DNA of 64,000 nucleotides from Haliotis rufescens (taxonomy: Eukaryota). A program made the translations under genes and the position numbers. A model generated the notes under the pieces. It made no database searches and had not been told where the DNA came from. It saw only the letters and a list, made by a program, of their open reading frames with translations. This document shows positions 4,117 to 57,210 of the stretch, one piece after another (the stretch's first letter is position 1; each line of letters begins with the position of its first letter). The stretch covers positions 57,288,001 to 57,352,000 of the forward strand of contig NW_025963890.1 of assembly GCF_023055435.1 (NCBI RefSeq), written 5' to 3'.

Positions 4117-4761
4117 ATGACGACAGCAGTTTGTGTAATTATTGCCTTTTTGGCAGTGACCATACACGGTACGTATATACAAATATACCCAAAAACGTTT
4201 TGGACTTAATTTTAAACTGTGCAATATTGTCAAAAAGATATTTTTCTAAAAAGCTAGCAGCGACTATTCATGTTATATATCATTGATGTTTTCTCATATC
4301 GAATATTGACAGCACAGGGCATGCCTTCATCAGCTCAGAACAGTGTCGGGTACGATATGAAAGCCTCCAACGTCCCCCTCGGTAGCACCGTCAACGGCAT
4401 ACCACTCGCACCTACACAGCATCCGAGCCCGATGCCAGGCGCTCTCTTGTCCCATGCCAGTAATGTCTTCAATAACAACCACCCGACGGCTGCCACCAAC
4501 AATCAACACGCCAACAACGCTGCCCAGTCCCCCATGAACTATCTCCCGTTCATGATGGGGGGTGACAACGGGCGCAGGATGGCCATGTACAGCATGATGA
4601 TGAACCCAAGGCAGTCCAACAATATGATGCTCCCTTTCGCCATGATGAACGGCGTCGACAACATGTGGCCCATGATGGCTCTCATGAACAATCGCAACCA
4701 GAGAGGTGGACAAGGCTTCGACCCCATGACGATGATGTTGCTTGGAGGCGAGATGATGTAA
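4117..4761 (+). CDS. Secreted Met/Asn-rich low-complexity protein, paralog 1 (159 aa, or 166 aa with the upstream acceptor)
   Basis: join(4117..4168, 4334..4761), with an alternative in-frame acceptor at 4313. Exon 2 encodes signal peptide MTTAVCVIIAFLAVTIH; phase-1 GT..AG intron; AATAAA at 4902. Confidence 0.9.
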
Positions 4762-9060: not shown

Positions 9061-12032
9061 ATGCATGATTTTTATACATCAGTATCAATATGGTGCTTCA
9101 CATATGTTGGTCACAATGGTACCAGTTTAATGGATTATTTTGTTGCTTCCTTAAACTTTTTCCAAAATATTACCGATATGGCTGTACACAGTAGAACGGA
9201 ATCTGATCATTTACCATTTTTATGCAAGCTTCTTCACGCTTTTACATTTAGTGAGAATACGAAAGATCATAATTGTGATACAAGGAAAAAGTTAATATTC
9301 CAAGATTTATTTGGGCAAGCAATAAAGCTCAAACGTTTATTGACACTATTTTATTTATTTCTACGCCTCAAGCAACAGAGATTATCGAAAGTTTGTTTTT
9401 TTAAGTTTTGTTTATAAGGAACTTATATAAGTAAAAAACTTGACTTAAATCTTATCATGTACATCACGTGACAAATGTTAATATCCAATCTGCATTGCAC
9501 TATGGGCCTTGATGCCTAAATTACCGAATAAACTGTCTGTCTGTCTGCTAATTCCGCAGCAGTAAAGGCATGTAAAGCTTTAGGAATTTCTTCGAAAAGC
9601 GCCCAAATTAGCATGTTCAAAGTCTAAATCACAACTCGAATCGTTTGATCATGAGTGTCAGTTAATAAAATATGACGTACAGGCTTTTACACAAGTTGCG
9701 TGCCCATAAAAGTTGTTTTGGAAAAAAATTTGCAAATTATTTTGGCGAAATATAAAGCCATTACTCAGTAAAAAATGAAAATGACTACACTATCTCCCTG
9801 AACAGTCGGTATTCATATTTTGAGAAGTTATCAAATGTTCAGTGTGTAGTGAATTTGATAAAAAACAAAAGTAGCGGAATTTTTAAGAGACCATGATTTA
9901 GACACTTGTGTTGAGTGCAACAATGAATTATTGTCAGGGGAAATTACAGTAATTGAAGTAGTTGTAAATTCTTTGAATGGTTTGTCTCCCTTACTTGAGA
10001 GTATTAATTCTATTATGGATAAGGGTATATTCCCGGATGATTGAAATGTTAAAGTAATGATACTTTCATTTAAAAAGGAAATAGGAATAGGAGTGATCTA
10101 AACAATTACAGGGGAAAATCTTTACTTCATATGACGGGAAAATATTTTAAATCAATAATTGAGTCGAGACTGCGATATTGGTCAGAATTAAATAAATTGA
10201 TAGTCGAGCCCCAAGTTGGGTTTAGAATGGAATTTTCAACGATATATAATATCTTTGTCTTGCATTCACTTGCTCTGAAATATCTACGTAAGCCTAAACA
10301 TCATTTTTATGCAGCATATATTGACTTCCGTAAAGCCTTTGATAAAGTTGATAGGAATAAGTTGTTATATATGTTATTACTGAAGGGTATTCATGGCAAA
10401 ATGTATAATGTCTTAGAAAGCATGTACATAAATGCGTGTGCTTGTGTTTGTTTAGGAAACAGATATTTTTTCAACGCCATGCGGTGTTAGACAAGGCTGT
10501 GTGCTTAGTCCTGTACTTTTCATATATTGTTTTCATTAACCAGTTGGCTACTGATGTGGTGGAAAGTGAAACGAATGGTGTCTTTGTAAATGACATGATT
10601 GAGGCCATCAAGATATAGTTGTTTGAAGTCAGATTCCGCTGTTGACATATATAATTAAGCCATTAGCATTAGAATGTTCCGGAAGTGGAATATAGAGGTA
10701 AATTAAAAAAAAAAAAACATATGTAAAAAAGGCGGTTATGTTAACCGTGTAGAAAAATAGTTTTATGGCAATGAATGAATGAACATAGTATCTTATTGTG
10801 AATGTCTAGTATTAGTATGATTAGTATGGTCAAAGCTTGTTTGACATAAGCTGTACAGGCGAAGAAAGCATGTTTTCAAATATATAATCTTATCAGGAAT
10901 TGTTTCTACTTTTGATGCAAACTCCTTCCGCATGCTATCGCAGTTAGATCTGGGGATACACTTGTAAGGAAAGTGTTGAAAAAATATACTGATTTTTTCA
11001 AAAGATTCGTTTTACTTTGTAAACGCACATCAACCAATGTTGTTCTTCGGGAAGTGGGGGTATATTCATTGTGTGTTAGGTATTTCTGTCGATGTATAAG
11101 GTATTGGTGTAGGTTGGTGCGTGTCCTCGAACTTGCTATGACATGCTAAAAGTACATGTATATGTGGATAATAGAGAAGTAAACTGGGCGTCACATGTTA
11201 AAATGTTGTTATTCCAAACATAATTCTCATACGTCTGGGTATCCTAGGTATTTGGGGATGAATGTTATTATGAGTAGCAGATGCATTGATATTCAAATTC
11301 AAACTTGGAACCAAAAGATTTATACTTCTGTATTTCTTTAACATTATTGATCGCATTAAACATTACTCGAACCTGAATTATAAATAACATCAAATTTTGA
11401 TAAATATCTTATGATAATACAAGCTAAATTTTGATGTCTATAACATGGTTTGAAAATTTTAAACGTAACGCTACCGAAAAACAGTGTATGATTCAAGACG
11501 CCTAATTTGTGATAAAGGTAACTTGATGGAGATCGAAGAAGAATATCATTTTTTGCTAGTGTGTCCCTACTACAGGTCAAGCAGAAATGTGTAGCTACAG
11601 ATATACTATCATAGTTATCCATCAAGAGAGAAGCTTATAGATTTGATGTCAACTAGAAATAGAAAAGTTTTGAAAGGTTTAGCCATTTTCATTAAAATAT
11701 TTAATGATATAAATGGAAATTTATGTACTTTCATTATATAGATACAGTATCGTAGATTTTCACCAGAGCAGAATCATACGGATTTGTAGCTTGATGTTCA
11801 CTTATGATATACTCCAAGCGATACTCATCAGTGTCAACAAGAGTTTTTAAAAGTCGATTGCAAAATTGATTGATTAATGTTAAGTGACTTCAAGGAATTT
11901 CTTGATTGATGTACAATGCTTGATGTAAATTTCTATATCACACACCATTGGCAATTTGTACACTGGGCCACTGGGACTCCAACACTGAAATAAATAGACT
12001 GTCTGTCTGTCTGTCTGCCTGTCTGTCTGTCT
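9061..12032 (+). mobile_element. Decayed APE-RT LINE (RTE-X-like), copy in unit A1
   Basis: APE C-terminal motifs (FTYVGHNGTSLMDYF..ESDHLP), RT motifs (NNYRG, Q.GFR, IDFRKAFDKV, GVRQGCVLSP) and a C-terminal EEYHF..VCP-like motif. Many frameshifts and stops; ends in AATAAA plus a (CTGT)n tail. Confidence 0.85.
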
Positions 12033-12534
12033 GCGTGTCGGTCAGTGTGATACCTGATGTTAGCGAAATGGTGAGGTTATCTTGCCTCGCCGGTGGCACC
12101 CGTAACAAACACATGCAAATACAAACAGTCTTGACTACGCATGCCAAGTCGTCACATGAACAAACACGGAATCATACCAAGACAAAATTAAATCCTTTCT
12201 TTTGTGAAAAAAACAAAACAATTTCATAAACAAATACTAACGTTGGCGCTATGTAGGATAGTTGAGACGAATATATGCACCATTTCTAATGCAACAGTTT
12301 ACTCACTTAATTGTCTATTTCGACGATAACTTAACAGTGTTGATTCAAGTATTCATAACAAATTACAAGAACTGGCAGCCCGGACGTGGAACGACTTAAT
12401 GTTACTCCACAGGAAGTTATTATTTAGAACTGCTGTGTAGATTTAGACTGATGCATGCAACATATCATTAGGGTATACGACTGGACATATGTGATACAAT
12501 GTAGCTATAGACATGGTCACTTTACGGGCATAAA

Positions 12535-12728
12535 ACAAGAATTATGTGATAACCAAGTCATGAAGACATGGTCACTTGACAACTTACAACATGTACATCA
12601 TGTAGACGGGTAATGTATTGCTGACAGGAAACCACGACCCACTGCAACACCAGCGGATATAAAAGGCCAAGTGCTGGACATTCAGCACATCATCCCTGGC
12701 TTGAGTTCTTGTTCAGAAGCAGCACAAG
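12535..12728 (+). promoter_or_regulatory. Promoter and non-coding exon 1 of paralog 2
   Basis: Conserved ~125-bp upstream block, TATAAAA at 12658-12664, donor AAG|GTAAG at 12728/12729. Confidence 0.8.
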
Positions 12729-13032
12729 GTAAGGAAACATCAACTATTTGTATCTTATATAGCTTCAGAATAAAGTAATACTAACCAAATATAATCTTTA
12801 AGTGTTTGAGTTGCTATCGCAATAATAATAGTAACAAATTCATACAGTGAGTTAATTTGTTTTACACCAATGTGAACAGTATTTTAGTTTTCGCGTCCTC
12901 TTATTGTAGGAGGAAAGCCCTTCACGTTACCCGTCTTTTGTAACGGTAATGGCAGTGAAGTAACCAAACTATTACTGATCTGGTTACAATTTCCTATTTA
13001 TATCATTTTTTCTCCCACAGAAAAGACGAATT

Positions 13033-13677
13033 ATGAAAGCAGTAGTTTGTGTCCTTTGTGCCTTCGTGGCAGTCACAATCCATGGTAAGTAATGAATATT
13101 TATTAGATTATAATATACTCCTTATATTTATATTTATAAATAGATGACACTTATATCAAATTGTTTGCATGTCTAAAGATATTCCAAGCATATTTCATAG
13201 AATTCAATGTTTCCTTTTGAAGAATAACTGGAAATATGTTCTTTTTCAGCTCAGAACAGTGTCGCCCCCGGAATGACGGCATCTGGCGTCCCCCTCGGTA
13301 ACTCGGTCAACGGTGTTCCTTTCGCATCTGCACAGCATCCGAGCCCGATGCCAGGCGCTCTCTTGTCCCATGCCAGTAATGTCTTCAATAACAACCACCC
13401 GACGGCTGCCACCAACAATCACCACGCCAACAACGCTGCCCAGTCCCCCATGAACTATCTCCCGTTCATGATGGGGGGTGACAACGGGCGCAGGATGGCC
13501 ATGTACAGCATGATGATGAACCCAAGGCAGTCCAACAATATGATGCTCCCTTTCGCCATGATGAACGGCGTCGACAACATGTGGCCCATGATGGCTCTCA
13601 TGAACAATCGCAACCAGAGAGGTGGACAAGGCTTCGACCCCATGACGATGATGTTGCTTGGAGGCGAGATGATGTAA
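13033..13677 (+). CDS. Secreted Met/Asn-rich protein, paralog 2 (159 aa)
   Basis: join(13033..13084, 13250..13677); signal MKAVVCVLCAFVAVTIHA then QNSVAPG...; canonical splice sites; AATAAA at 13818. Confidence 0.92.
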
Positions 13678-14579
13678 ACACGACCCTACGACTGTAATAA
13701 TTTATCCATTTCATGTCACCTATTTATTGAAGAATGGACGTCCCAACTATTTCCGACCCCTGATTCATATATTGTATTTCAATTTCAAAAATGTTGCTGT
13801 ATGAACATTCTCACTAAAATAAAGAGATTGCATCAATATGAAATTAATTGTTTTATGTGAATGGACTTTGAGACAGATCTATTCAAAGATAGCATTTTAT
13901 CTTCGAGTACGGCACTGTTTCTACATATTAAGCAATAAAGATGCATTCATATTATTAAAGGCCCCTTCACTCAAAACGCCATCGCCAGAGAATATTTATG
14001 AAGATATTCTCGATTATCAGCCAAACAGATTCCATTAGGCGTAAACAGGCAGGTAGACAGACAGACAGACAGACAGCTTATTCAGTAATTTAGGCATCAA
14101 GGCCCATAGTACAATGCAGATTGGATATTAACATTTGTCACGTGAGGTACATGATAAGATTATTATTATAAAGACACGTTTTAAAATACAGAAACAAAAT
14201 AGATCATATCAGGATTTTAGCAGATTTTTAATTAACTGACGGTCTTTAAAAATACATTAGACGTAAAAGGGAAAATAGTAATGAAATGTATATGAATTGA
14301 TCACTGAAAATCAGTGATGACACCAGGTGTATGTGAAGAGGGTATAAGCGTACCATTTTTTTCGTAGACCAAGAGGTATAAAAGAAGGGAAAAGCTCATG
14401 GTACCTTTCCCAGCTGCGGTAAAGTAGCGGTCAGTTTTTAAAAAATCAATAAAAAACAACCTTTATATCCATATGGCATACATAACATTCGCGGATGTTC
14501 AAAGTGGTGCACAGCACTGCTATCCAAATTAATTATTTGCTTTGTTGTTAATAGAGCTATAGTAGGGCTGAGTTAGAAA

Positions 14580-21909: not shown

Positions 21910-22554
21910 ATGAAAGCAGTAGTTTGTGTCCTTTGTGCCTTCGTGGCAGTCACAATCCATGGTAAGTAATGAATATTTATTAGATTATAATATACTCCTT
22001 ATATTTATATTTATAAATAGATGACACTTATATCAAATTGTTTGCATGTCTAAAGATATTCCAAGCATATTTCATAGAATTCAATGTTTCCTTTTGAAGA
22101 ATAACTGGAAATATGTTCTTTTTCAGCTCAGAACAGTGTCGCCCCCGGAATGACGGCATCTGGCGTCCCCCTCGATAACTCGGTCAACGGTGTTCCTTTC
22201 GCATCTGCACAGCATCCGAGCCCGATGCCAGGCGCTCTCTTGTCCCATGCCAGTAATGTCTTCAATAACAACCACCCGACGGCTGCCACCAACAATCACC
22301 ACGCCAACAACGCTGCCCAGTCCCCCATGAACTTTCTCCCGTTCATGATGGGGGGTGACAACGGGCGCAGGATGGCCATGTACAGCATGATGATGAACCC
22401 AAGGCAGTCCAACAATATGATGCTCCCTTTCGCCATGATGAACGGCGTCGACAACATGTGGCCCATGATGGCTCTCATGAACAATCGCAACCAGAGAGGT
22501 GGACAAGGCTTCGACCCCATGACGATGATGTTTCTTGGAGGCGAGATGATGTAA
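21910..22554 (+). CDS. Secreted Met/Asn-rich protein, paralog 3 (159 aa)
   Basis: join(21910..21961, 22127..22554); signal exon identical to paralog 2; AATAAA at 22671. Confidence 0.92.
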
Positions 22555-28359: not shown

Positions 28360-29110
28360 CAGCAGTAGTAGTAGTAGCAGCAGTAGTAGTAGTAGCATAA
28401 TTCTTATTATTGTTGCTATTATGTACAGATTAAAATAATAAAATGCAGCAAAGAGGGTTTGCGTGATTCTGGCACAGTCAGGCTGGTTAGGGTCATTATC
28501 AGCTCAGGGTCCTTGCCCCCTCAGCGAATAATAATAAAATAATTATTATTTTTACTCTGTAGATGAAGATTGTATCAATTATATGCATGCCCAAGCATGT
28601 CTCAAACTTATTTTTACAGTATTCAATGTTTTCTTTTGAAGTATTCTAAATAAAATATGATCTGAAATATGTTCTTTTTCAGCTCAGAATAGTGTCGCCC
28701 CCGGAATGACAGCATCTAGCATTCCACTCGGCAACACTGTCAACGGCATACCCCTCGCACCTGCACAGCATCCGAGCCCGATGCCAGGCGCTTTCTTGTC
28801 CCATGCCAGTAATGTCTTCAATAACAACCACCCGACGGCTGCCACCAACAATCACCACGCCAACAACGCTGCCCAGTCCCCCATGAACTATCTCCCTTTC
28901 ATGATGGGGGGTGACAACGGGCGCAGGATGGCCATGTACAGCATGATGATGAACCCAAGGCAGTCCAACAATATGATGCTCCCTTTCGCCATGATGAACG
29001 GCGTCGACAACATGTGGCCCATGATGGCTCTCATGAACAATCGCAACCAGAGAGGTGGACAAGGCTTCGACCCCATGACGATGATGTTTCTTGGAGGCGA
29101 GATGATGTAA
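28202..29110 (+). CDS. Secreted Met/Asn-rich protein, paralog 4 (159 aa)
   Basis: join(28202..28253, 28683..29110); signal MKAVVCVIFAFVAVTIHA; AATAAA at 29251. Confidence 0.92.
28309..28397. repeat. (TAG/CAG)n microsatellite in intron 2
   Basis: Seen directly; the equivalent positions in paralogs 5 and 6 are N-gaps. Confidence 0.95.
28420..28522 (-). mobile_element. 3'-terminal ~100 bp of the R4/Dong-like element, in intron 2
   Basis: Its reverse complement matches 417-521; flanked by TAA/TTA-rich tracts; also present at ~35483-35578 and ~42597-42697. Confidence 0.85.
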
Positions 29111-35207: not shown

Positions 35208-36149
35208 ATGAAAGCAGTAGCTTGTGTCATTTTCGCCTTTGTGGCAGTCACCATTCATGGTAAGTAGTTTAGTGAGTGAGTGAGTTAATATTTAACGTCA
35301 CATCGGCAGTACTTTAGTAGTANNNNNNNNNNNNNNNNNNNNNNNNNNNNNNNNNNNNNNNNNNNNNNNNNNNNNNNNNNNNNNNNNNNNNNNNNNNNNN
35401 NNNNNNNNNNNNNNNNNNNNNNNNNNNNNNNNNNNNNNNNNNNNNNNNNNNNNNNNNGCATAATTATTAATATTGTTGTTATTATGTACAGATTAAAATA
35501 ATAAAATGCAGCAAAGAGGGTTTGGGTGATTCTGACACAGTCAGGCTGGTTAGGGTCATCATCAGCTCGGGGTCCTTGTTATTTATTATTATTATTCTGA
35601 AGACGAAAATTTTAACTATTATATGCATGTCCAAGCATGTTTCAAACTATTTCTTACAGTATTCAATGTTTTCTTTTGAAGTATTCTAAATAAAATATGA
35701 TTGGAAATATGTCCTTTTCAGCTCAGAATAGTGTCGCCCCCGGAATGACGGCATCTAGCATTCCACTCGGCAACACCGTCAACGGCATACCCCTCGCACC
35801 TGCACAGCATCCGAGCCCGATGCCAGGCGCTCTCTTGTCCCATGCCAGTAATGTCTTCAATAACAACCACCCGACGGCTGCCACCAACAATCACCACGCC
35901 AACAACGCTGCCCAGTCCCCCATGAACTTTCTCCCTTTCATGATGGGGGGTGACAACGGGCGCAGGATGGCCATGTACAGCATGATGATGAACCCAAGGC
36001 AGTCCAACAATATGATGCTCCCTTTCGCCATGATGAACGGCGTCGACAACATGTGGCCCATGATGGCTCTCATGAACAATCGCAACCAGAGAGGTGGACG
36101 AGGCTTCGACCCTATGACAATGATGTTTCTTGGAGGCGAGATGATGTAA
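35208..36149 (+). CDS. Secreted Met/Asn-rich protein, paralog 5 (159 aa)
   Basis: join(35208..35259, 35722..36149); signal MKAVACVIFAFVAVTIHA; N-gap inside intron 2; AATAAA at 36307. Confidence 0.9.
35323..35457. other. N-gap over the intron-2 microsatellite
   Basis: Run of N. Confidence 0.99.
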
Positions 36150-42340: not shown

Positions 42341-43284
42341 ATGAAAGCAGTAGTTTGTGTCATTTTCGCCTTCGTGGCAGTCACCATTCATGGTAAGTAG
42401 TTTAGTGAGTGAGTGAGTGAGTAAATATTTAACGTCANNNNNNNNNNNNNNNNNNNNNNNNNNNNNNNNNNNNNNNNNNNNNNNNNNNNNNNNNNNNNNN
42501 NNNNNNNNNNNNNNNNNNNNNNNNNNNNNNNNNNNNNNNNNNNNNNNNNNNNNNNNNNNNNNNNNNNNNNNNNNNATTCTTCTTATTGTTGTTATTGTGT
42601 ACAGATTAAAATAATAAATACAGCAAAGAGAGTTTGGGTGATTCTGGTACAGTCAGGCTGGTTAGGGTCATCATCAGCTCAGGGTCCTTGCCCCCTCAGC
42701 GAAAAATAATAAAATAATTATTATTATTACTCTGTAGACGAAGATTTTATCAATTATATGCATGTCCAAGCATGTTTCAAACTAATTTTTACAGTATTCA
42801 ATGTTTTCTTTTGAAGTATTCTAAATAAAATATGATTGGAAATATGTCCTTTTCAGCTCAGAATAGTGTCGCCCCCGGAATGACGGCATCTAGCATTCCA
42901 CTCGGCAACAACGTCAACGGCATACCCCTCGCACCTGCACAGCATCCGAGCCCGATGCCAGGCGCTCTCTTGTCCCATGCCAGTAATGTCTTCAATAACA
43001 ACCACCCGACGGCTGCCACCAACAATCAACACGCCAACAACGCTGCCCAGTCCCCCATGAACTATCTCCCTTTCATGATGGGGGGTGACAACGGTCGCAG
43101 GATGGCCATGTACAGCATGATGATGAACCCAAGGCAGTCCAACAATATGATGCTCCCTTTCGCCATGATGAACGGCGTCGACAACATGTGGCCCATGATG
43201 GCTCTCATGAACAATCGTAACCAGAGAGGTGGAAAAGGGTTCGACCCCATGACGATGATGTTGCTTGGAGGCGAGATGATGTAA
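42341..43284 (+). CDS. Secreted Met/Asn-rich protein, paralog 6 (159 aa)
   Basis: join(42341..42392, 42857..43284); signal MKAVVCVIFAFVAVTIHA; AATAAA at 43443. Confidence 0.9.
42438..42575. other. N-gap over the intron-2 microsatellite
   Basis: Run of N. Confidence 0.99.
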
Positions 43285-50438: not shown

Positions 50439-51307
50439 ATGAAGACAGCAATTTGTGCTCTTTTCGCCTTCGTGGCAGTCACTATTCATGGTAGGTGATG
50501 GCAGCTTCAAAAATAAATGTTCGTAATGCTTTCGTGTCCCCTGAAAACAAACGACTGCACATTGCATAAAATGTGGCCGAGTTAGTACGACGAATTCCTG
50601 TATTTCCTAATGCTGTTTTCGGGCCATATTTCCGCAATATTTCCCTTGATTACGTTCTATTTAGATATGAGAATAACAGTTCTTTTTTCAAAACAACTGC
50701 TTCAGCTCAGAATAGTGTCGTCCCCGGGAATACAGCGTCCAACGTGCCCCTCGGAAACGGTGTTCCTTTCTCACCTGCACAGCATCCGAGCCCGATGCAT
50801 GTCTAAAGATATTCCAAACATATTTCATAGAATACAATGTTTTCCTTTGAAGAATGACTGGAAATATGTTCTTTTTCAGCTCAGAACAGTGTTGCCCCCG
50901 GAATGACGGCATCTAGCGTTCCCCTCGGCAACAACGTCAACGGCATACCCCTCGCACCTGCACAGCATCCGAGCCCGATGCCAGGCGCTCTCTTGTCCCA
51001 TGCCAGTAATGTCTTCAATAACAACCACCCGACGGCTGCCACCAACAATCACCACGCCAACAACGCTGCCCAGTCCCCCATGAACTATCTCCCTTTCATG
51101 ATGGGGGGTGACAACGGGCGCAGGATGGCCATGTACAGCATGATGATGAACCCAAGGCAGTCCAACAATATGATGCTCCCTTTCGCCATGATGAACGGCG
51201 TCGACAACATGTGGCCCATGATGGCTCTCATGAGCAATCGCAACCAGAGAGGCGGACGAGGCTTCGACCCTATGACGATGATGTTTCTTGGAAGCGAGAT
51301 GATGTAA
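50439..51307 (+). CDS. Secreted Met/Asn-rich protein, paralog 7 (159 aa)
   Basis: join(50439..50490, 50880..51307); signal MKTAICALFAFVAVTIHA; a competing upstream acceptor lies at 50706; AATAAA at 51424. Confidence 0.85.
50706..50806 (+). pseudogene. Truncated duplicate of the 5' part of exon 3, within intron 2 of paralog 7
   Basis: TTCAG|CTCAGAATAGTGTC... encodes AQNSVVPGNTASNVPLGNGVPFSPAQHPSPMHV*. Confidence 0.85.
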
Positions 51308-56328: not shown

Positions 56329-56681
56329 ATGAAAGTATTTTGCATCTGTATAGCTCTGTTTGGCGTTGCAGTTTACGGTAAGTAAACATATCATGGATTT
56401 CTTATAAAGATAATGTTCTACCGCTCCTCAAATATGTATACGTACCTATACCTCTCACCCCACAACACTTCTTTAAGACGTGAGATATATATTGTACTCT
56501 GCGAATCATGTCTATTAGTATGTAAGACGCATAGAAAATGCTATAATTGCGTGTATTTAATGTCGAAATCACATGGTCGATAGGCTTGATAAAATGAAAA
56601 TTACCAAAAACGAACAAATGGTTAAAACGATCTCTTATGATTATGGTCGGTAGTAGTAGTAGAAGAAGAAGTAGTAGTAGT

Positions 56682-56760
<79 letters not shown>

Positions 56761-57210
56761 AACCTTAATTCACATGAAACATTTTTGCTACCAGCTCAAG
56801 CCCCTCCATCAAGTCATCCTACCTTGAACATCCAAGCCTACCCCACGGCGAATACCTACTCTTACCCAATGTCAAACAACTACGCCTACCGAGGGAACAA
56901 CGGCAACATCATGTCGTCTTACAGTGGTTACCATAGCAACGCCGCGTCAACTCAAAATGGTTACCAGAGCAACAACAACATCAACTCTTTCCTGCTTCCA
57001 ATGATGATGGGTATGGATCAAGGAAATCACATGGCAACTCTCGGAATGATGATGAACTCCAAACAGGGCAACAGCATGCTCCCCTTCTACATGATGAACC
57101 AAGGGTATGAGAACATGCTACCCATGATGGCCTTCATGAACCGCGGCAACCAGAGAGGCCAGAGGATGAACCCCTTCATGATGATGACTCTTAGTGAAGC
57201 GATGAACTGA
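56329..57210 (+). CDS. Divergent secreted Met/Asn/Tyr-rich paralog 8 (154 aa)
   Basis: join(56329..56377, 56795..57210); signal MKVFCICIALFGVAVYA then QAPP...; same phase-1 intron. The C-terminal domain aligns with paralogs 1-7 (LPMMMG..MMMN..Q.N.MLPF.MMN...NM.PMMA.MN..NQRG...P..MM). AATAAA at 57359. Confidence 0.9.
56650..56760. repeat. (TAG/CAG/AAG)n microsatellite in intron 2 of paralog 8
   Basis: Seen directly. Confidence 0.95.

What the first reader, a model, noticed from the sequence alone, without database searches (positions are those of the whole stretch)
13450..13677. Met-rich C-terminal domain is an internal repeat conserved in the distant paralog: candidate redox, metal-binding or self-assembly module
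Seen: about five hydrophobic blocks (NYLPFMM, RMAMYSMMM, NMMLPFAMM, NMWPMMALM, FDPMTMMLL) separated by G/N/Q/R spacers. Paralog 8 keeps this register (SFLLPMMM, HMATLGMMM, SMLPFYMM, NMLPMMAFM, MNPFMMMTL) while its N-terminal half is unalignable. Known: Met-rich low-complexity domains drive oxidation-sensitive assembly in yeast Pbp1/ataxin-2, and Met/His clusters bind Cu(I) and Ag(I) in Ctr1 Mets motifs. Inferred: a sticker-and-spacer domain for extracellular coacervation, ROS scavenging or metal binding.
Basis: partly seen in the sequence, partly recalled or inferred. Interest (0 to 1): 0.75.

Follow-up and report, generated by a model that had tools for sequence, protein, structure and literature searches.

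The report
Abalone secreted methionine-rich tail domain
This stretch encodes a conserved tail, about 28% methionine, shared by a family of small secreted abalone proteins with very different front halves; it probably makes them stick together outside the cell, but its tissue and function are untested.

Summary
Window 13450-13674 is real coding sequence. It is the last 75 codons of a transcribed, spliced three-exon abalone gene, and 21 of the 75 residues are Met. The window holds seven near-identical copies plus divergent paralog 8.

- **Homology:** The tail of paralog 8 aligns with it in the same register (z = 16 against shuffles). The N-terminal halves do not align (z = -0.9).
- **Family size:** The genome holds 19 complete copies of the module. 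They are fused to unrelated low-complexity front ends.
- **Distribution:** A profile search of 1.84 billion proteins found five cluster representatives. Three carry Haliotis names and two carry no name. There was no match in Pfam or among solved structures, and no confident fold.
- **Selection:** The module is the most conserved part of the gene. It is 97.9% identical in DNA among copies, against 66-71% for introns and 3'UTR, with dN/dS about 0.2-0.4.
- **Internal repeat:** The claim is weak. Only blocks 3 and 4 resemble each other (profile z = 2.0).
- **Met positions:** They often swap with Leu or Phe and show no MxxM-type periodicity. This favours a hydrophobic block-and-spacer association tail over a metal site.
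- **Shell link:** One family member has the G/M/P composition reported for a major greenlip abalone nacre protein. The sequences could not be compared.

Function and tissue remain unproven. The scan noted this family before on the adjacent window (s1-818176).

The parts
12711..12728 (+). 3' end of non-coding exon 1 (5'UTR) of gene 2; GT donor at 12729-12730; the start of the exon was not determined
   Evidence: Joint 12728->13021 with GT..AG ends in one X2 contig, and a loose end of one X1 contig. The 19-nt loose-end motif occurs once upstream of each of the 7 genes: 7 matches, 0 expected by chance. Sequence checked.
13021..13084 (+). Exon 2 of gene 2: ATG at 13033, 17 codons of hydrophobic signal peptide, phase-1 donor
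   Evidence: Contigs of X1 and X2 cover 13022/13024-13083/13084. Translation and GT donor. All 7 genes carry this exon end.
13085..13249 (+). Intron 2 (GT..AG), removed in RNA-like contigs
   Evidence: Joint skipping 165 bases in X1 (1 contig, depth 61.7) and a near-identical joint in X2. No X1, X2 or X5 contig lies in the intron, whereas the DNA-like run X15 covers all 30 bins.
13250..13833 (+). Exon 3 of gene 2: mature protein of 141 aa, stop at 13675-13677, 3'UTR with AATAAA at 13818-13823
   Evidence: ORF. Contigs reach 13813 (X2) and 13833 (X5). Poly(A) signal.
13450..13674 (+). Met-rich C-terminal module of gene 2 (the finding): 75 aa, 21 Met
4534..4758 (+). Module of gene 1. This gene uses an upstream exon-3 acceptor that adds QGMPSS.
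   Evidence: Loose ends of X1 and X5 contigs read the gene-1-type junction.
22327..22551 (+). Module of gene 3
28883..29107 (+). Module of gene 4
35922..36146 (+). Module of gene 5
43057..43281 (+). Module of gene 6
51080..51304 (+). Module of gene 7
56329..56377 (+). Signal-peptide exon of paralog 8 (type B)
   Evidence: matches the N-terminus of P0010 and is followed by GTAAGT.
56795..57210 (+). Exon 3 of paralog 8. Its N-terminal half is rich in Tyr, Asn and Ser. The module lies at 56983-57207.
   Evidence: Identical in 138 of 138 residues to a Haliotis rufescens uncharacterized protein.

Best explanation
The segment encodes the conserved C-terminal module, about 75 aa, of an apparently abalone-restricted family of small secreted proteins. 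These proteins lack Cys and are largely disordered.

Each gene joins three parts:
- a signal peptide;
- a fast-evolving low-complexity front end, which is Asn-rich, Tyr/Asn/Gln-rich, or made of Gly/Met repeats;
- this module.

The module consists of four or five short blocks of Met, Leu, Phe, Tyr or Trp, each at most 8 residues long. Conserved Gly/Asn/Gln/Arg/Pro spacers separate the blocks.

Inferred mechanism: the blocks act as soft hydrophobic stickers (Met-Met and Met-aromatic contacts, with some helical propensity). They would give weak, multivalent self-association and co-association of family members once the proteins are secreted at high concentration. On this reading the module is a shared assembly tag, and the variable front end sets the material property. 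The most likely site is the mantle secretome and shell organic matrix. The seven-copy tandem array would serve high output.

Shown: gene structure, transcription, module homology, restricted distribution in the libraries searched, purifying selection, and the absence of a predicted fold. Inferred: secretion, assembly, and the shell location.
For: - **Gene model and transcription:** Contigs lie on exons only, with GT..AG joints, in runs X1 and X2, and exon-only cover in X5 from a related species.
- **Signal peptide:** A signal-peptide exon is present in all 7 genes.
- **Homology beyond composition:** z = 14-17 and 0 of 1000 shuffles for type A against B, L016 and L018. Non-Met columns are invariant across 22 sequences: L70, P71, G75, G106, N109, R123, P130.
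- **Family size:** 19 full modules and 1 fragment in the genome. Sixteen full modules lie at C112 57.279-57.412 Mb and three on C2. The front ends are unrelated.
- **Distribution:** 5 hits at E <= 0.001 among 1.84e9 representatives. Three are Haliotis-named and two are unnamed.
- **Selection:**
  - DNA identity among the 7 copies is 97.9% for the module, 93.4% for the N-half, 83.6% for exon 2, 66-69% for introns and 71% for the 3'UTR.
  - pN/pS is 0.18 for the module and 0.35 for the N-half.
  - Type A against type B gives omega 0.23-0.39.
  - Against H. asinina, the module keeps 60 of 75 residues and the N-half 43 of 66.
- **Hydrophobicity is what is conserved:** Of 21 Met positions, 16-18 stay hydrophobic but only 10-15 stay Met.
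- **Block and spacer pattern:**
- **No stable fold:** AlphaFold2 gave pLDDT 51 and pTM 0.15, with three short helices. The Atlas model of P0008 has pLDDT 0.40.
- **Shell link:** Mature P0008 is G 30.5%, M 12.3% and P 11.5%, with no other residue above 10%. This matches the only row of Table 1 in PMC6003135 whose residues above 10% include M. That row is CLC_12027/idb_54497, listed as 'G/M/P; repeats', at 5.3-11.7% of acid-soluble nacre protein.
- **Precedents:** Met-rich regions are common to insoluble shell scaffold proteins of Pinctada, and NU-5 knockdown disturbs nacre (PMC7591529). Limpet larval shell-field cells express Gly- and Met-rich proteins (bioRxiv 10.1101/2024.05.16.592602).
Against: - No tissue information was available. 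The runs are coded and carry no library description.
- No row with M and N above 10% is among the major shell proteins of H. laevigata in Table 1. Types A and B are therefore not shown to be in shell. A tryptic digest of type A gives only an 80-aa peptide and three peptides with 5-8 Met each, so it could be missed.
- The match of P0008/L038 to CLC_12027 rests on composition and a quoted motif only. The sequence is in a supplement that I could not see.
- Self-association is pure inference. No tool here tests it.
- In the Pinctada work, the authors ascribed aggregation of the recombinant region mainly to its Glu-rich part, not to Met.
- Low synonymous divergence in exon 3 (pS 0.07-0.12) against about 0.3 in introns may partly reflect gene conversion rather than selection.
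- The dN/dS values come from few synonymous sites (about 36). The 21 pairs among 7 genes are not independent, and dS between types is saturated.
Confidence: 0.45

Rival explanations
1. The module folds on binding a specific partner, such as chitin, another matrix protein or a mineral face. It would be a docking domain rather than a self-associating sticker tail.
For: Position-specific conservation of non-hydrophobic residues (LP, G-x-D-x-G, D/E-N-M, R-G, N/D-P) across all 22 aligned sequences. Helical propensity in three segments.
Against: No confident fold (pLDDT 51). No similarity to any Pfam family (0 families for 4 of 4 proteins) or to any solved structure (0 hits at E <= 10). No partner is known.
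Confidence: 0.15
2. The module is a redox element. Its Met residues are oxidised by extracellular H2O2 or peroxidase, either as sacrificial scavengers or as a switch that dissolves or hardens the assembly. This would be a secreted analogue of the Pbp1 low-complexity domain.
For: The module is 28% Met. All 21 Met positions are unchanged in all 7 window copies and in P0001 and P0002. Peroxidase-like, tyrosinase-like and amine-oxidase-like proteins are listed in the H. laevigata shell proteome (PMC6003135 Table 1). Reversible Met oxidation controls Pbp1 condensates (review PMC8394241, passages).
Against: Met is replaced by Leu, Phe or Ile at 6-11 of 21 positions in distant members. No extracellular Met sulfoxide reductase system is known to me (recalled). 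Scavenging alone does not explain the conserved spacers.
Confidence: 0.1
3. The module binds Cu(I) or Ag(I) through Met thioethers, as in Ctr1 Mets motifs or bacterial Met-rich copper proteins.
For: High Met density with many MxM and MM pairs. His residues occur in the type A N-half.
Against: The module has no His or Cys. Met spacing is not enriched at distances 2-4 in any of 4 modules (z -1.5 to +0.5). Only 10-15 of 21 Met positions are kept in distant members. The Ctr1 motif definition is recalled, not tested against a model.
Confidence: 0.07
4. The same assembly tail operates in a non-shell secretion such as mucus, periostracum, egg coat or radular matrix. Types A and B would then not be shell proteins at all.
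For: No M/N-rich entry among the major H. laevigata shell proteins. The Tyr-rich front ends of type B and the Pro/Gly/Tyr repeats of L013 recall tanned or adhesive materials (recalled resemblance).
Against: A G/M/P-rich relative fits a major nacre protein by composition. Types A and B would be hard to detect by tryptic proteomics.
Confidence: 0.2

Closest known systems
H. laevigata nacre protein CLC_12027/idb_54497 (Mann et al. 2018, PMC6003135; Table 1 and passages read)
   Same: It is secreted, its residues above 10% are G, M and P, and it has G/M-rich repeats after the signal peptide. Family members P0008 (H. asinina) and L038 have this composition and repeat type and carry the module.
   Different: The window's own genes (types A and B) are M/N-rich, not G/M/P-rich, and are absent from that table.
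Met-rich regions of Pinctada insoluble shell scaffold proteins (NU-5, P,NU-5, LMP; PMC7591529, abstract and sections 6 and 11 read) and MRNP34 (seen only as a cited reference)
   Same: They are secreted molluscan matrix proteins with a Met-rich region proposed to drive scaffold self-assembly.
   Different: There is no sequence homology: the profile search returned no protein named as bivalve. The bivalve proteins are large (45-180 kDa) with acidic regions. The abalone module is a discrete 75-aa conserved domain in small basic proteins. Type A has no Lys, so a Met-Lys sulfilimine cross-link is not possible within it.
Abductin (scallop hinge elastomer; Chem Rev review PMC9999432, passages read)
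   Same: It is a small secreted molluscan protein with unusually high Met and a random-coil character. Its [GGFGGMGGGX] repeats recall the Gly/Met repeats of L018, L019 and L038.
   Different: Abductin is 58 mol% Gly, while type A is 10% Gly. It has no counterpart of the module, and homology was not found.
Yeast Pbp1/ataxin-2 Met-rich low-complexity domain (review PMC8394241, passages read)
   Same: It is a Met-rich, disordered region whose self-association depends on Met.
   Different: It is an intracellular RNA-binding protein with no signal peptide and is unrelated in sequence. Its redox control depends on cytosolic reductases. No Pfam domain of any kind was found in the abalone proteins.
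H. asinina Met-rich shell proteins ML6A10, ML5A7 and ML8B1 (Marie et al. 2010, PMC2989941; passages read)
   Same: They are abalone shell proteins noted for 7-11% Met and no homologues.
   Different: The reported composition of ML6A10 (Ala 13%, Pro 13%, Met 11%, 12 kDa) does not fit the H. asinina type A proteins (Asn 15-16%, Met 12.5%, 15.7 kDa). The sequences are in a figure and supplement that I could not see.

Membership tests
Abalone Met-rich C-terminal module family (unnamed; NCBI 'uncharacterized protein') | Significant match to the 76-position module profile | tested here: met
   E = 3e-33 for the window copies and 19 full modules in the genome. The profile finds named homologues in H. 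cracherodii (P0002, P0005) and H. asinina (P0008); an H. rufescens protein (P0010) is a member of the P0005 cluster.
Abalone Met-rich C-terminal module family (unnamed; NCBI 'uncharacterized protein') | Signal-peptide exon followed by one large exon encoding a variable front end plus the module | tested here: met
   Spliced contigs. The signal exon end is present in 7 of 7 type A genes and in paralog 8. The signal peptide was judged by eye; no predictor was run.
Nacre protein CLC_12027/idb_54497 of H. laevigata | Sequence identity or orthology | not testable with these tools
   The sequence is only in Additional file 27 of PMC6003135, and supplements are closed. Only the composition (G/M/P) and the repeat motif agree, and only for P0008 and L038, not for the window's genes.
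Ctr1-type or bacterial Met-motif Cu(I) sites | Regularly spaced Met (MxM, MxxM, MxxxM), often with His | tested here: not met
   No enrichment of Met-Met distances 2-4 over shuffles in 4 of 4 modules. The module has no His. The motif definition is recalled.
Pbp1/ataxin-2 | Lsm and LsmAD domains and intracellular location | tested here: not met
   Pfam: 0 families for 4 of 4 proteins at E <= 10. The product has a signal peptide.
Abductin | Gly about 58% with [GGFGGMGGGX] repeats | tested here: not met
   Type A has 14 Gly in 141 residues and no such repeat. L018 is 29% Gly with GGMTNPM repeats.
True internal tandem repeat domain | Units similar to each other beyond what composition gives | tested here: inconclusive
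   Type A z = -0.34, type B z = 3.8, L016 z = 0.9, L018 z = 0.7. Profile comparison of blocks 3 and 4 gives z = 2.0 (9 of 200).

The most novel reading that the evidence does not exclude
The module is a family-wide, redox-tunable co-assembly tag. Nineteen differently 'loaded' secreted proteins would use the same Met/aromatic sticker tail to condense together into one extracellular phase in the extrapallial space. Matrix oxidases would then convert Met to the sulfoxide and set or release the material. This would be an extracellular counterpart both of the Pbp1 Met-rich domain and of the conserved terminal domains of silks.
Probability: 0.15. Interest if true: 0.7.

Novelty: new variant of a known kind. 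Interest (0 to 1): 0.45.

Why it matters
Met-rich regions keep turning up in molluscan shell and ligament proteins, yet they have been treated as a compositional bias. Here the bias is a discrete domain. It is position-conserved, under purifying selection, and attached to many unrelated low-complexity front ends in one lineage. That makes it a clean unit for experiments: a single 75-aa piece that can be expressed, mutated (Met to Leu or Gln) and tested for assembly, oxidation response and metal binding. If one member really is a top nacre protein, the family offers a handle on how abalone nacre matrix is put together.

Tried and rejected
- **Pfam:** 0 families for 4 of 4 proteins at E <= 10.
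- **Solved structures:** a profile search found 0 hits at E <= 10.
- **ESM Atlas:** no usable hit by features for type A or for P0008. The structural rows for P0008 had TM <= 0.25, which is noise.
- **AlphaFold2:** mean pLDDT was 51, so no fold search was run on the model.
- **Second word-index protein search:** the G/M-rich L018 protein found only P0008 and an unrelated aquaporin-domain protein, P0011.
- **Papers:** short peptide motifs and the NCBI accessions or LOC id were found in 0 papers. I therefore found no printed description of these proteins in the library searched. Subscription papers and supplements were not covered.
- **Neuropeptide precursor:** considered because of the G-R-R in type A. 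Rejected because the site is absent in type B, L016 and L018.
- **GPI signal:** rejected because the last hydrophobic stretch is only about 9 residues (reading).
- **His-rich antisense ORF at 13246-13629:** rejected as the mirror image of ATG codons. The GT..AG joints put the gene on the + strand.
- **ML6A10 of Marie 2010:** rejected on composition.
- **Tissue of expression:** could not be obtained. The run records are coded and have no library text.
- **Spliced model:** I searched exon 3 alone. I sent no joined exon 2 + exon 3 protein of my own to any tool. Full-length database models P0001-P0005 were used as returned.
- **Supplements that may bear on the shell claim:** PMC6003135 (Additional files 4, 5 and 27) and PMC2989941 (Additional files 1 and 2). 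They are closed and I did not ask for them.
- **N runs:** 35323-35457 and 42438-42575 were left as they are.

Full report
**What is in the sequence**

The window is eukaryotic DNA with 38.7% G+C and two N runs. Positions 13273-13677 form a 134-codon open frame. It lies inside a larger exon that starts at an AG acceptor at 13250.

The last 75 codons (13450-13674) hold 21 Met, 10 Asn and 9 Gly, and no Cys, His, Lys or Ile. The 141-aa exon-3 product has a pI of 8.6.

tblastn of this product against the window finds seven copies at 93-100% identity, spaced 6.6-8.9 kb apart, and an eighth at 48% identity over the C-terminal part.

**Gene model and transcription**

One sequencing-run run and one read-laying run (37; 5201 letters, four runs) were used.
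- In X1, X2 and X5, contigs lie only on the predicted exons and on two dispersed repeats: 8, 10 and 8 of 30 bins have depth. The DNA-like run X15 covers 30 of 30 bins.
- X1 and X2 each hold a contig that joins 13084 to 13250 across a GT..AG intron.
- X2 also joins 12728 to 13021, which reveals a non-coding first exon. Its 3' motif recurs upstream of all seven genes.
- Contigs end at 13813-13833, next to AATAAA at 13818-13823.

The gene therefore has three exons, is spliced on the + strand, and is present in RNA-like assemblies of two species labels. The run kinds are the tool's guess. The exon-only cover and the joints are the evidence. Contigs cannot give expression level, and no tissue information was available.

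Exon 2 encodes 17 hydrophobic residues that look like a signal peptide. I judged this by eye. The end of this exon is present in 7 of 7 genes and in paralog 8.

I searched exon 3 alone and made no joined model of my own.

**Whose genome**

- The best database relatives are 'uncharacterized protein' entries of Haliotis cracherodii (92% and 91% identity) and H. asinina (72% and 70%). These were the 4 hits among 5 candidates.
- The exon-3 product of paralog 8 is identical in 138 of 138 residues to an H. rufescens reference protein.

**The module is a real domain, not only a composition**

- Type A against type B aligns at E = 7e-18 with compositional adjustment.
- Against 1000 composition-preserving shuffles, the type A module scores z = 16.4, 17.1 and 14.2 with the modules of paralog 8, L016 and L018. 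None of the 1000 shuffles reaches the observed score in any comparison.
- The N-terminal halves of A and B score below the shuffle mean (823 of 1000 reach it).
- In a 22-sequence alignment, the invariant columns include non-Met residues: Leu-Pro, Gly, Gly, Asn, Arg and Pro.

**Family and distribution**

- Searching the whole genome with the protein and with the profile gives 19 complete modules and one fragment.
- Sixteen complete modules lie in a single 133-kb region of contig C112. They comprise seven of type A, nine with Tyr/Asn/Gln-rich or repeat-bearing front ends, and one long Asn/Met-rich gene upstream. Three more lie on contig C2, with Gly/Met(/Pro) repeat front ends and a C-terminal extension.
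- A profile search of 1.84 billion cluster representatives returned 5 proteins at E <= 0.001. Three are Haliotis-named. Two are unnamed single contigs, one from Logan and one from ENA.
- Pfam gave 0 families for 4 of 4 proteins, and solved structures gave 0 hits. The ESM Atlas gave nothing usable.
- An earlier follow-up on the adjacent window (s1-818176) described the same family and also left function and tissue open. My results agree with it.

**Selection**

- Among the seven type A genes, mean pairwise DNA identity is:

| Segment | Identity |
|---|---|
| Module | 97.9% |
| Exon-3 N-half | 93.4% |
| Signal exon | 83.6% |
| Introns | 66-69% |
| 3'UTR | 71% |

- Pooled pN/pS is 0.18 in the module and 0.35 in the N-half. 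The 21 pairs are not independent, and there are only about 36 synonymous sites.
- Type A against type B modules gives omega 0.23-0.39, with dS near or beyond saturation. The comparisons with L016 and L018 have dS beyond saturation and give no omega. Within type B, omega is 0.36. L018 against L019 gives 0.06.
- Against H. asinina, the module keeps 60 of 75 residues and the N-half 43 of 66.
- One caveat applies. Synonymous divergence in exon 3 (0.07-0.12) is far below intron divergence, so exon-limited gene conversion may contribute.

**Internal repeat**

- Off-diagonal self-alignment against 300 shuffles gives z = -0.34 for type A, 3.84 for type B, 0.91 for L016 and 0.71 for L018.
- A column-profile self-comparison of seven non-redundant members finds block 3 against block 4 as the best pair, at an offset of 13 columns. 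Support is marginal: z = 2.0, and 9 of 200 column shuffles reach it.
- A two-unit duplication of an N-M-x-P-x-x-x-M-N unit is possible. A five-unit repeat is not supported.
- What is supported is the block-and-spacer layout. Hydrophobic residues are depleted at distance 8 in 4 of 4 modules (z -2.1 to -3.2), and at distance 7 in 3 of 4 (z -2.4 to -3.1; type A -1.4).

**What the Met residues are doing**

- All 21 Met are unchanged in the seven window copies.
- In distant members, 10-15 of the 21 positions stay Met, while 16-18 stay hydrophobic.
- Met-Met distances 1-8 show no enrichment over shuffles (|z| below 2).
- The predicted helices have low hydrophobic moments (0.01-0.28).
- AlphaFold2 with 22 sequences gives pLDDT 51 and pTM 0.15, with helices only at residues 78-89, 107-120 and 130-137.
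- Together these results favour generic, malleable hydrophobic contact blocks in a mostly disordered chain. They argue against a defined thioether metal site and against a stable globular fold.

**Link to shell**

I read all of Table 1 of Mann et al. 2018 (PMC6003135).
- Exactly one row lists M among the residues above 10%. It is CLC_12027/idb_54497: 'SSP, TM; IDR, G/M/P; repeats', at 5.3-11.7% of the acid-soluble nacre fractions. The text gives its repeat motif as [GMPG/MXn].
- Family member P0008 (H. asinina) has G 30.5%, M 12.3% and P 11.5%, with no other residue above 10%, and carries GGPMSGPMGG-type repeats. L038 is its counterpart in this genome.
- This is a match of composition and motif, not of sequence. 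The sequence is in a closed supplement.
- No row fits the M/N-rich types A or B. A tryptic digest of type A yields one 80-aa peptide and three peptides with 5-8 Met each, so these proteins are poor targets for standard proteomics.

Other literature:
- Marie et al. 2010 (PMC2989941, passages) reported Met-rich H. asinina shell proteins, but the composition given for ML6A10 does not fit type A.
- Kintsu et al. 2020 (PMC7591529; abstract, sections 6 and 11, passages) found Met-rich regions in most insoluble scaffold proteins of Pinctada. NU-5 knockdown disturbs nacre. The authors attribute the Ca-dependent aggregation of their recombinant piece mainly to its Glu-rich part.
- A limpet preprint reports Gly- and Met-rich proteins in larval shell-field cells.
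- Abductin (PMC9999432, passages) and Pbp1 (PMC8394241, passages) are compositional and mechanistic analogues only.

**Verdict**

The best reading is a lineage-restricted assembly tail on secreted matrix-type proteins, probably of the mantle and shell system (confidence 0.45). Rivals are a partner-docking domain (0.15), a non-shell secretion using the same tail (0.2), a redox element (0.1) and a Cu(I)/Ag(I) site (0.07).

The kind of thing, Met-rich secreted molluscan low-complexity proteins, is known. A discrete conserved Met-rich module shuffled onto many front ends did not turn up in my paper searches.

Noticed in passing
window 35323-35457 and 42438-42575: The two N runs (135 and 138 bases) both fall inside intron 2 of type A genes 5 and 6, at equivalent places. 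They were left untouched.
   Followed up: no
window 9447-9547 and 12083-12124: These are short dispersed repeats. Contig depth in the DNA-like run X15 jumps to about 470 and 4600, against 4-20 elsewhere. They are also the only non-exon places covered in the RNA-like runs.
   Followed up: no
window 56640-56760: A long (GTA)n/(GTAGCA)n microsatellite lies in the intron directly upstream of exon 3 of paralog 8. It reads as a poly-Val/poly-Ser open frame continuous with the exon.
   Followed up: no
window 50708-50803 (L017): A second, 78% identical copy of the first 35 codons of exon 3 lies about 100 bases upstream of the exon 3 of gene 7.
   Followed up: partly
window 4300-4360 (gene 1): Gene 1 uses an acceptor 21 bases further upstream, which adds QGMPSS after the signal peptide. 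The same junction is read in loose ends of X1 and X5 contigs and in the H. cracherodii protein P0001.
   Followed up: partly
window 13246-13629, minus strand: A 127-codon His-rich antisense open frame mirrors the Met codons (ATG read backwards is CAT). No evidence supports its use.
   Followed up: partly
window exon 3 against the introns of the seven type A genes: Synonymous divergence in exon 3 (0.07-0.12) is far lower than intron and UTR divergence (about 0.3). This suggests exon-limited gene conversion or constraint at the nucleotide level.
   Followed up: partly
L039:1462-1593 (G000 C112 57412138-57412230): A 44-codon fragment holding only the last third of the module lies about 70 bases after the stop of the last type B-like gene. 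It is probably a remnant of a partial duplication.
   Followed up: no
L018, L019, L038 (G000 C2 9.149-9.194 Mb): Three Gly/Met(/Pro)-repeat genes carry the module internally. After it come a second NNMLP-type block, (QGGM)n repeats and a conserved ALPFWLLGG end. L018 and L019 are an inverted pair with omega 0.06.
   Followed up: partly
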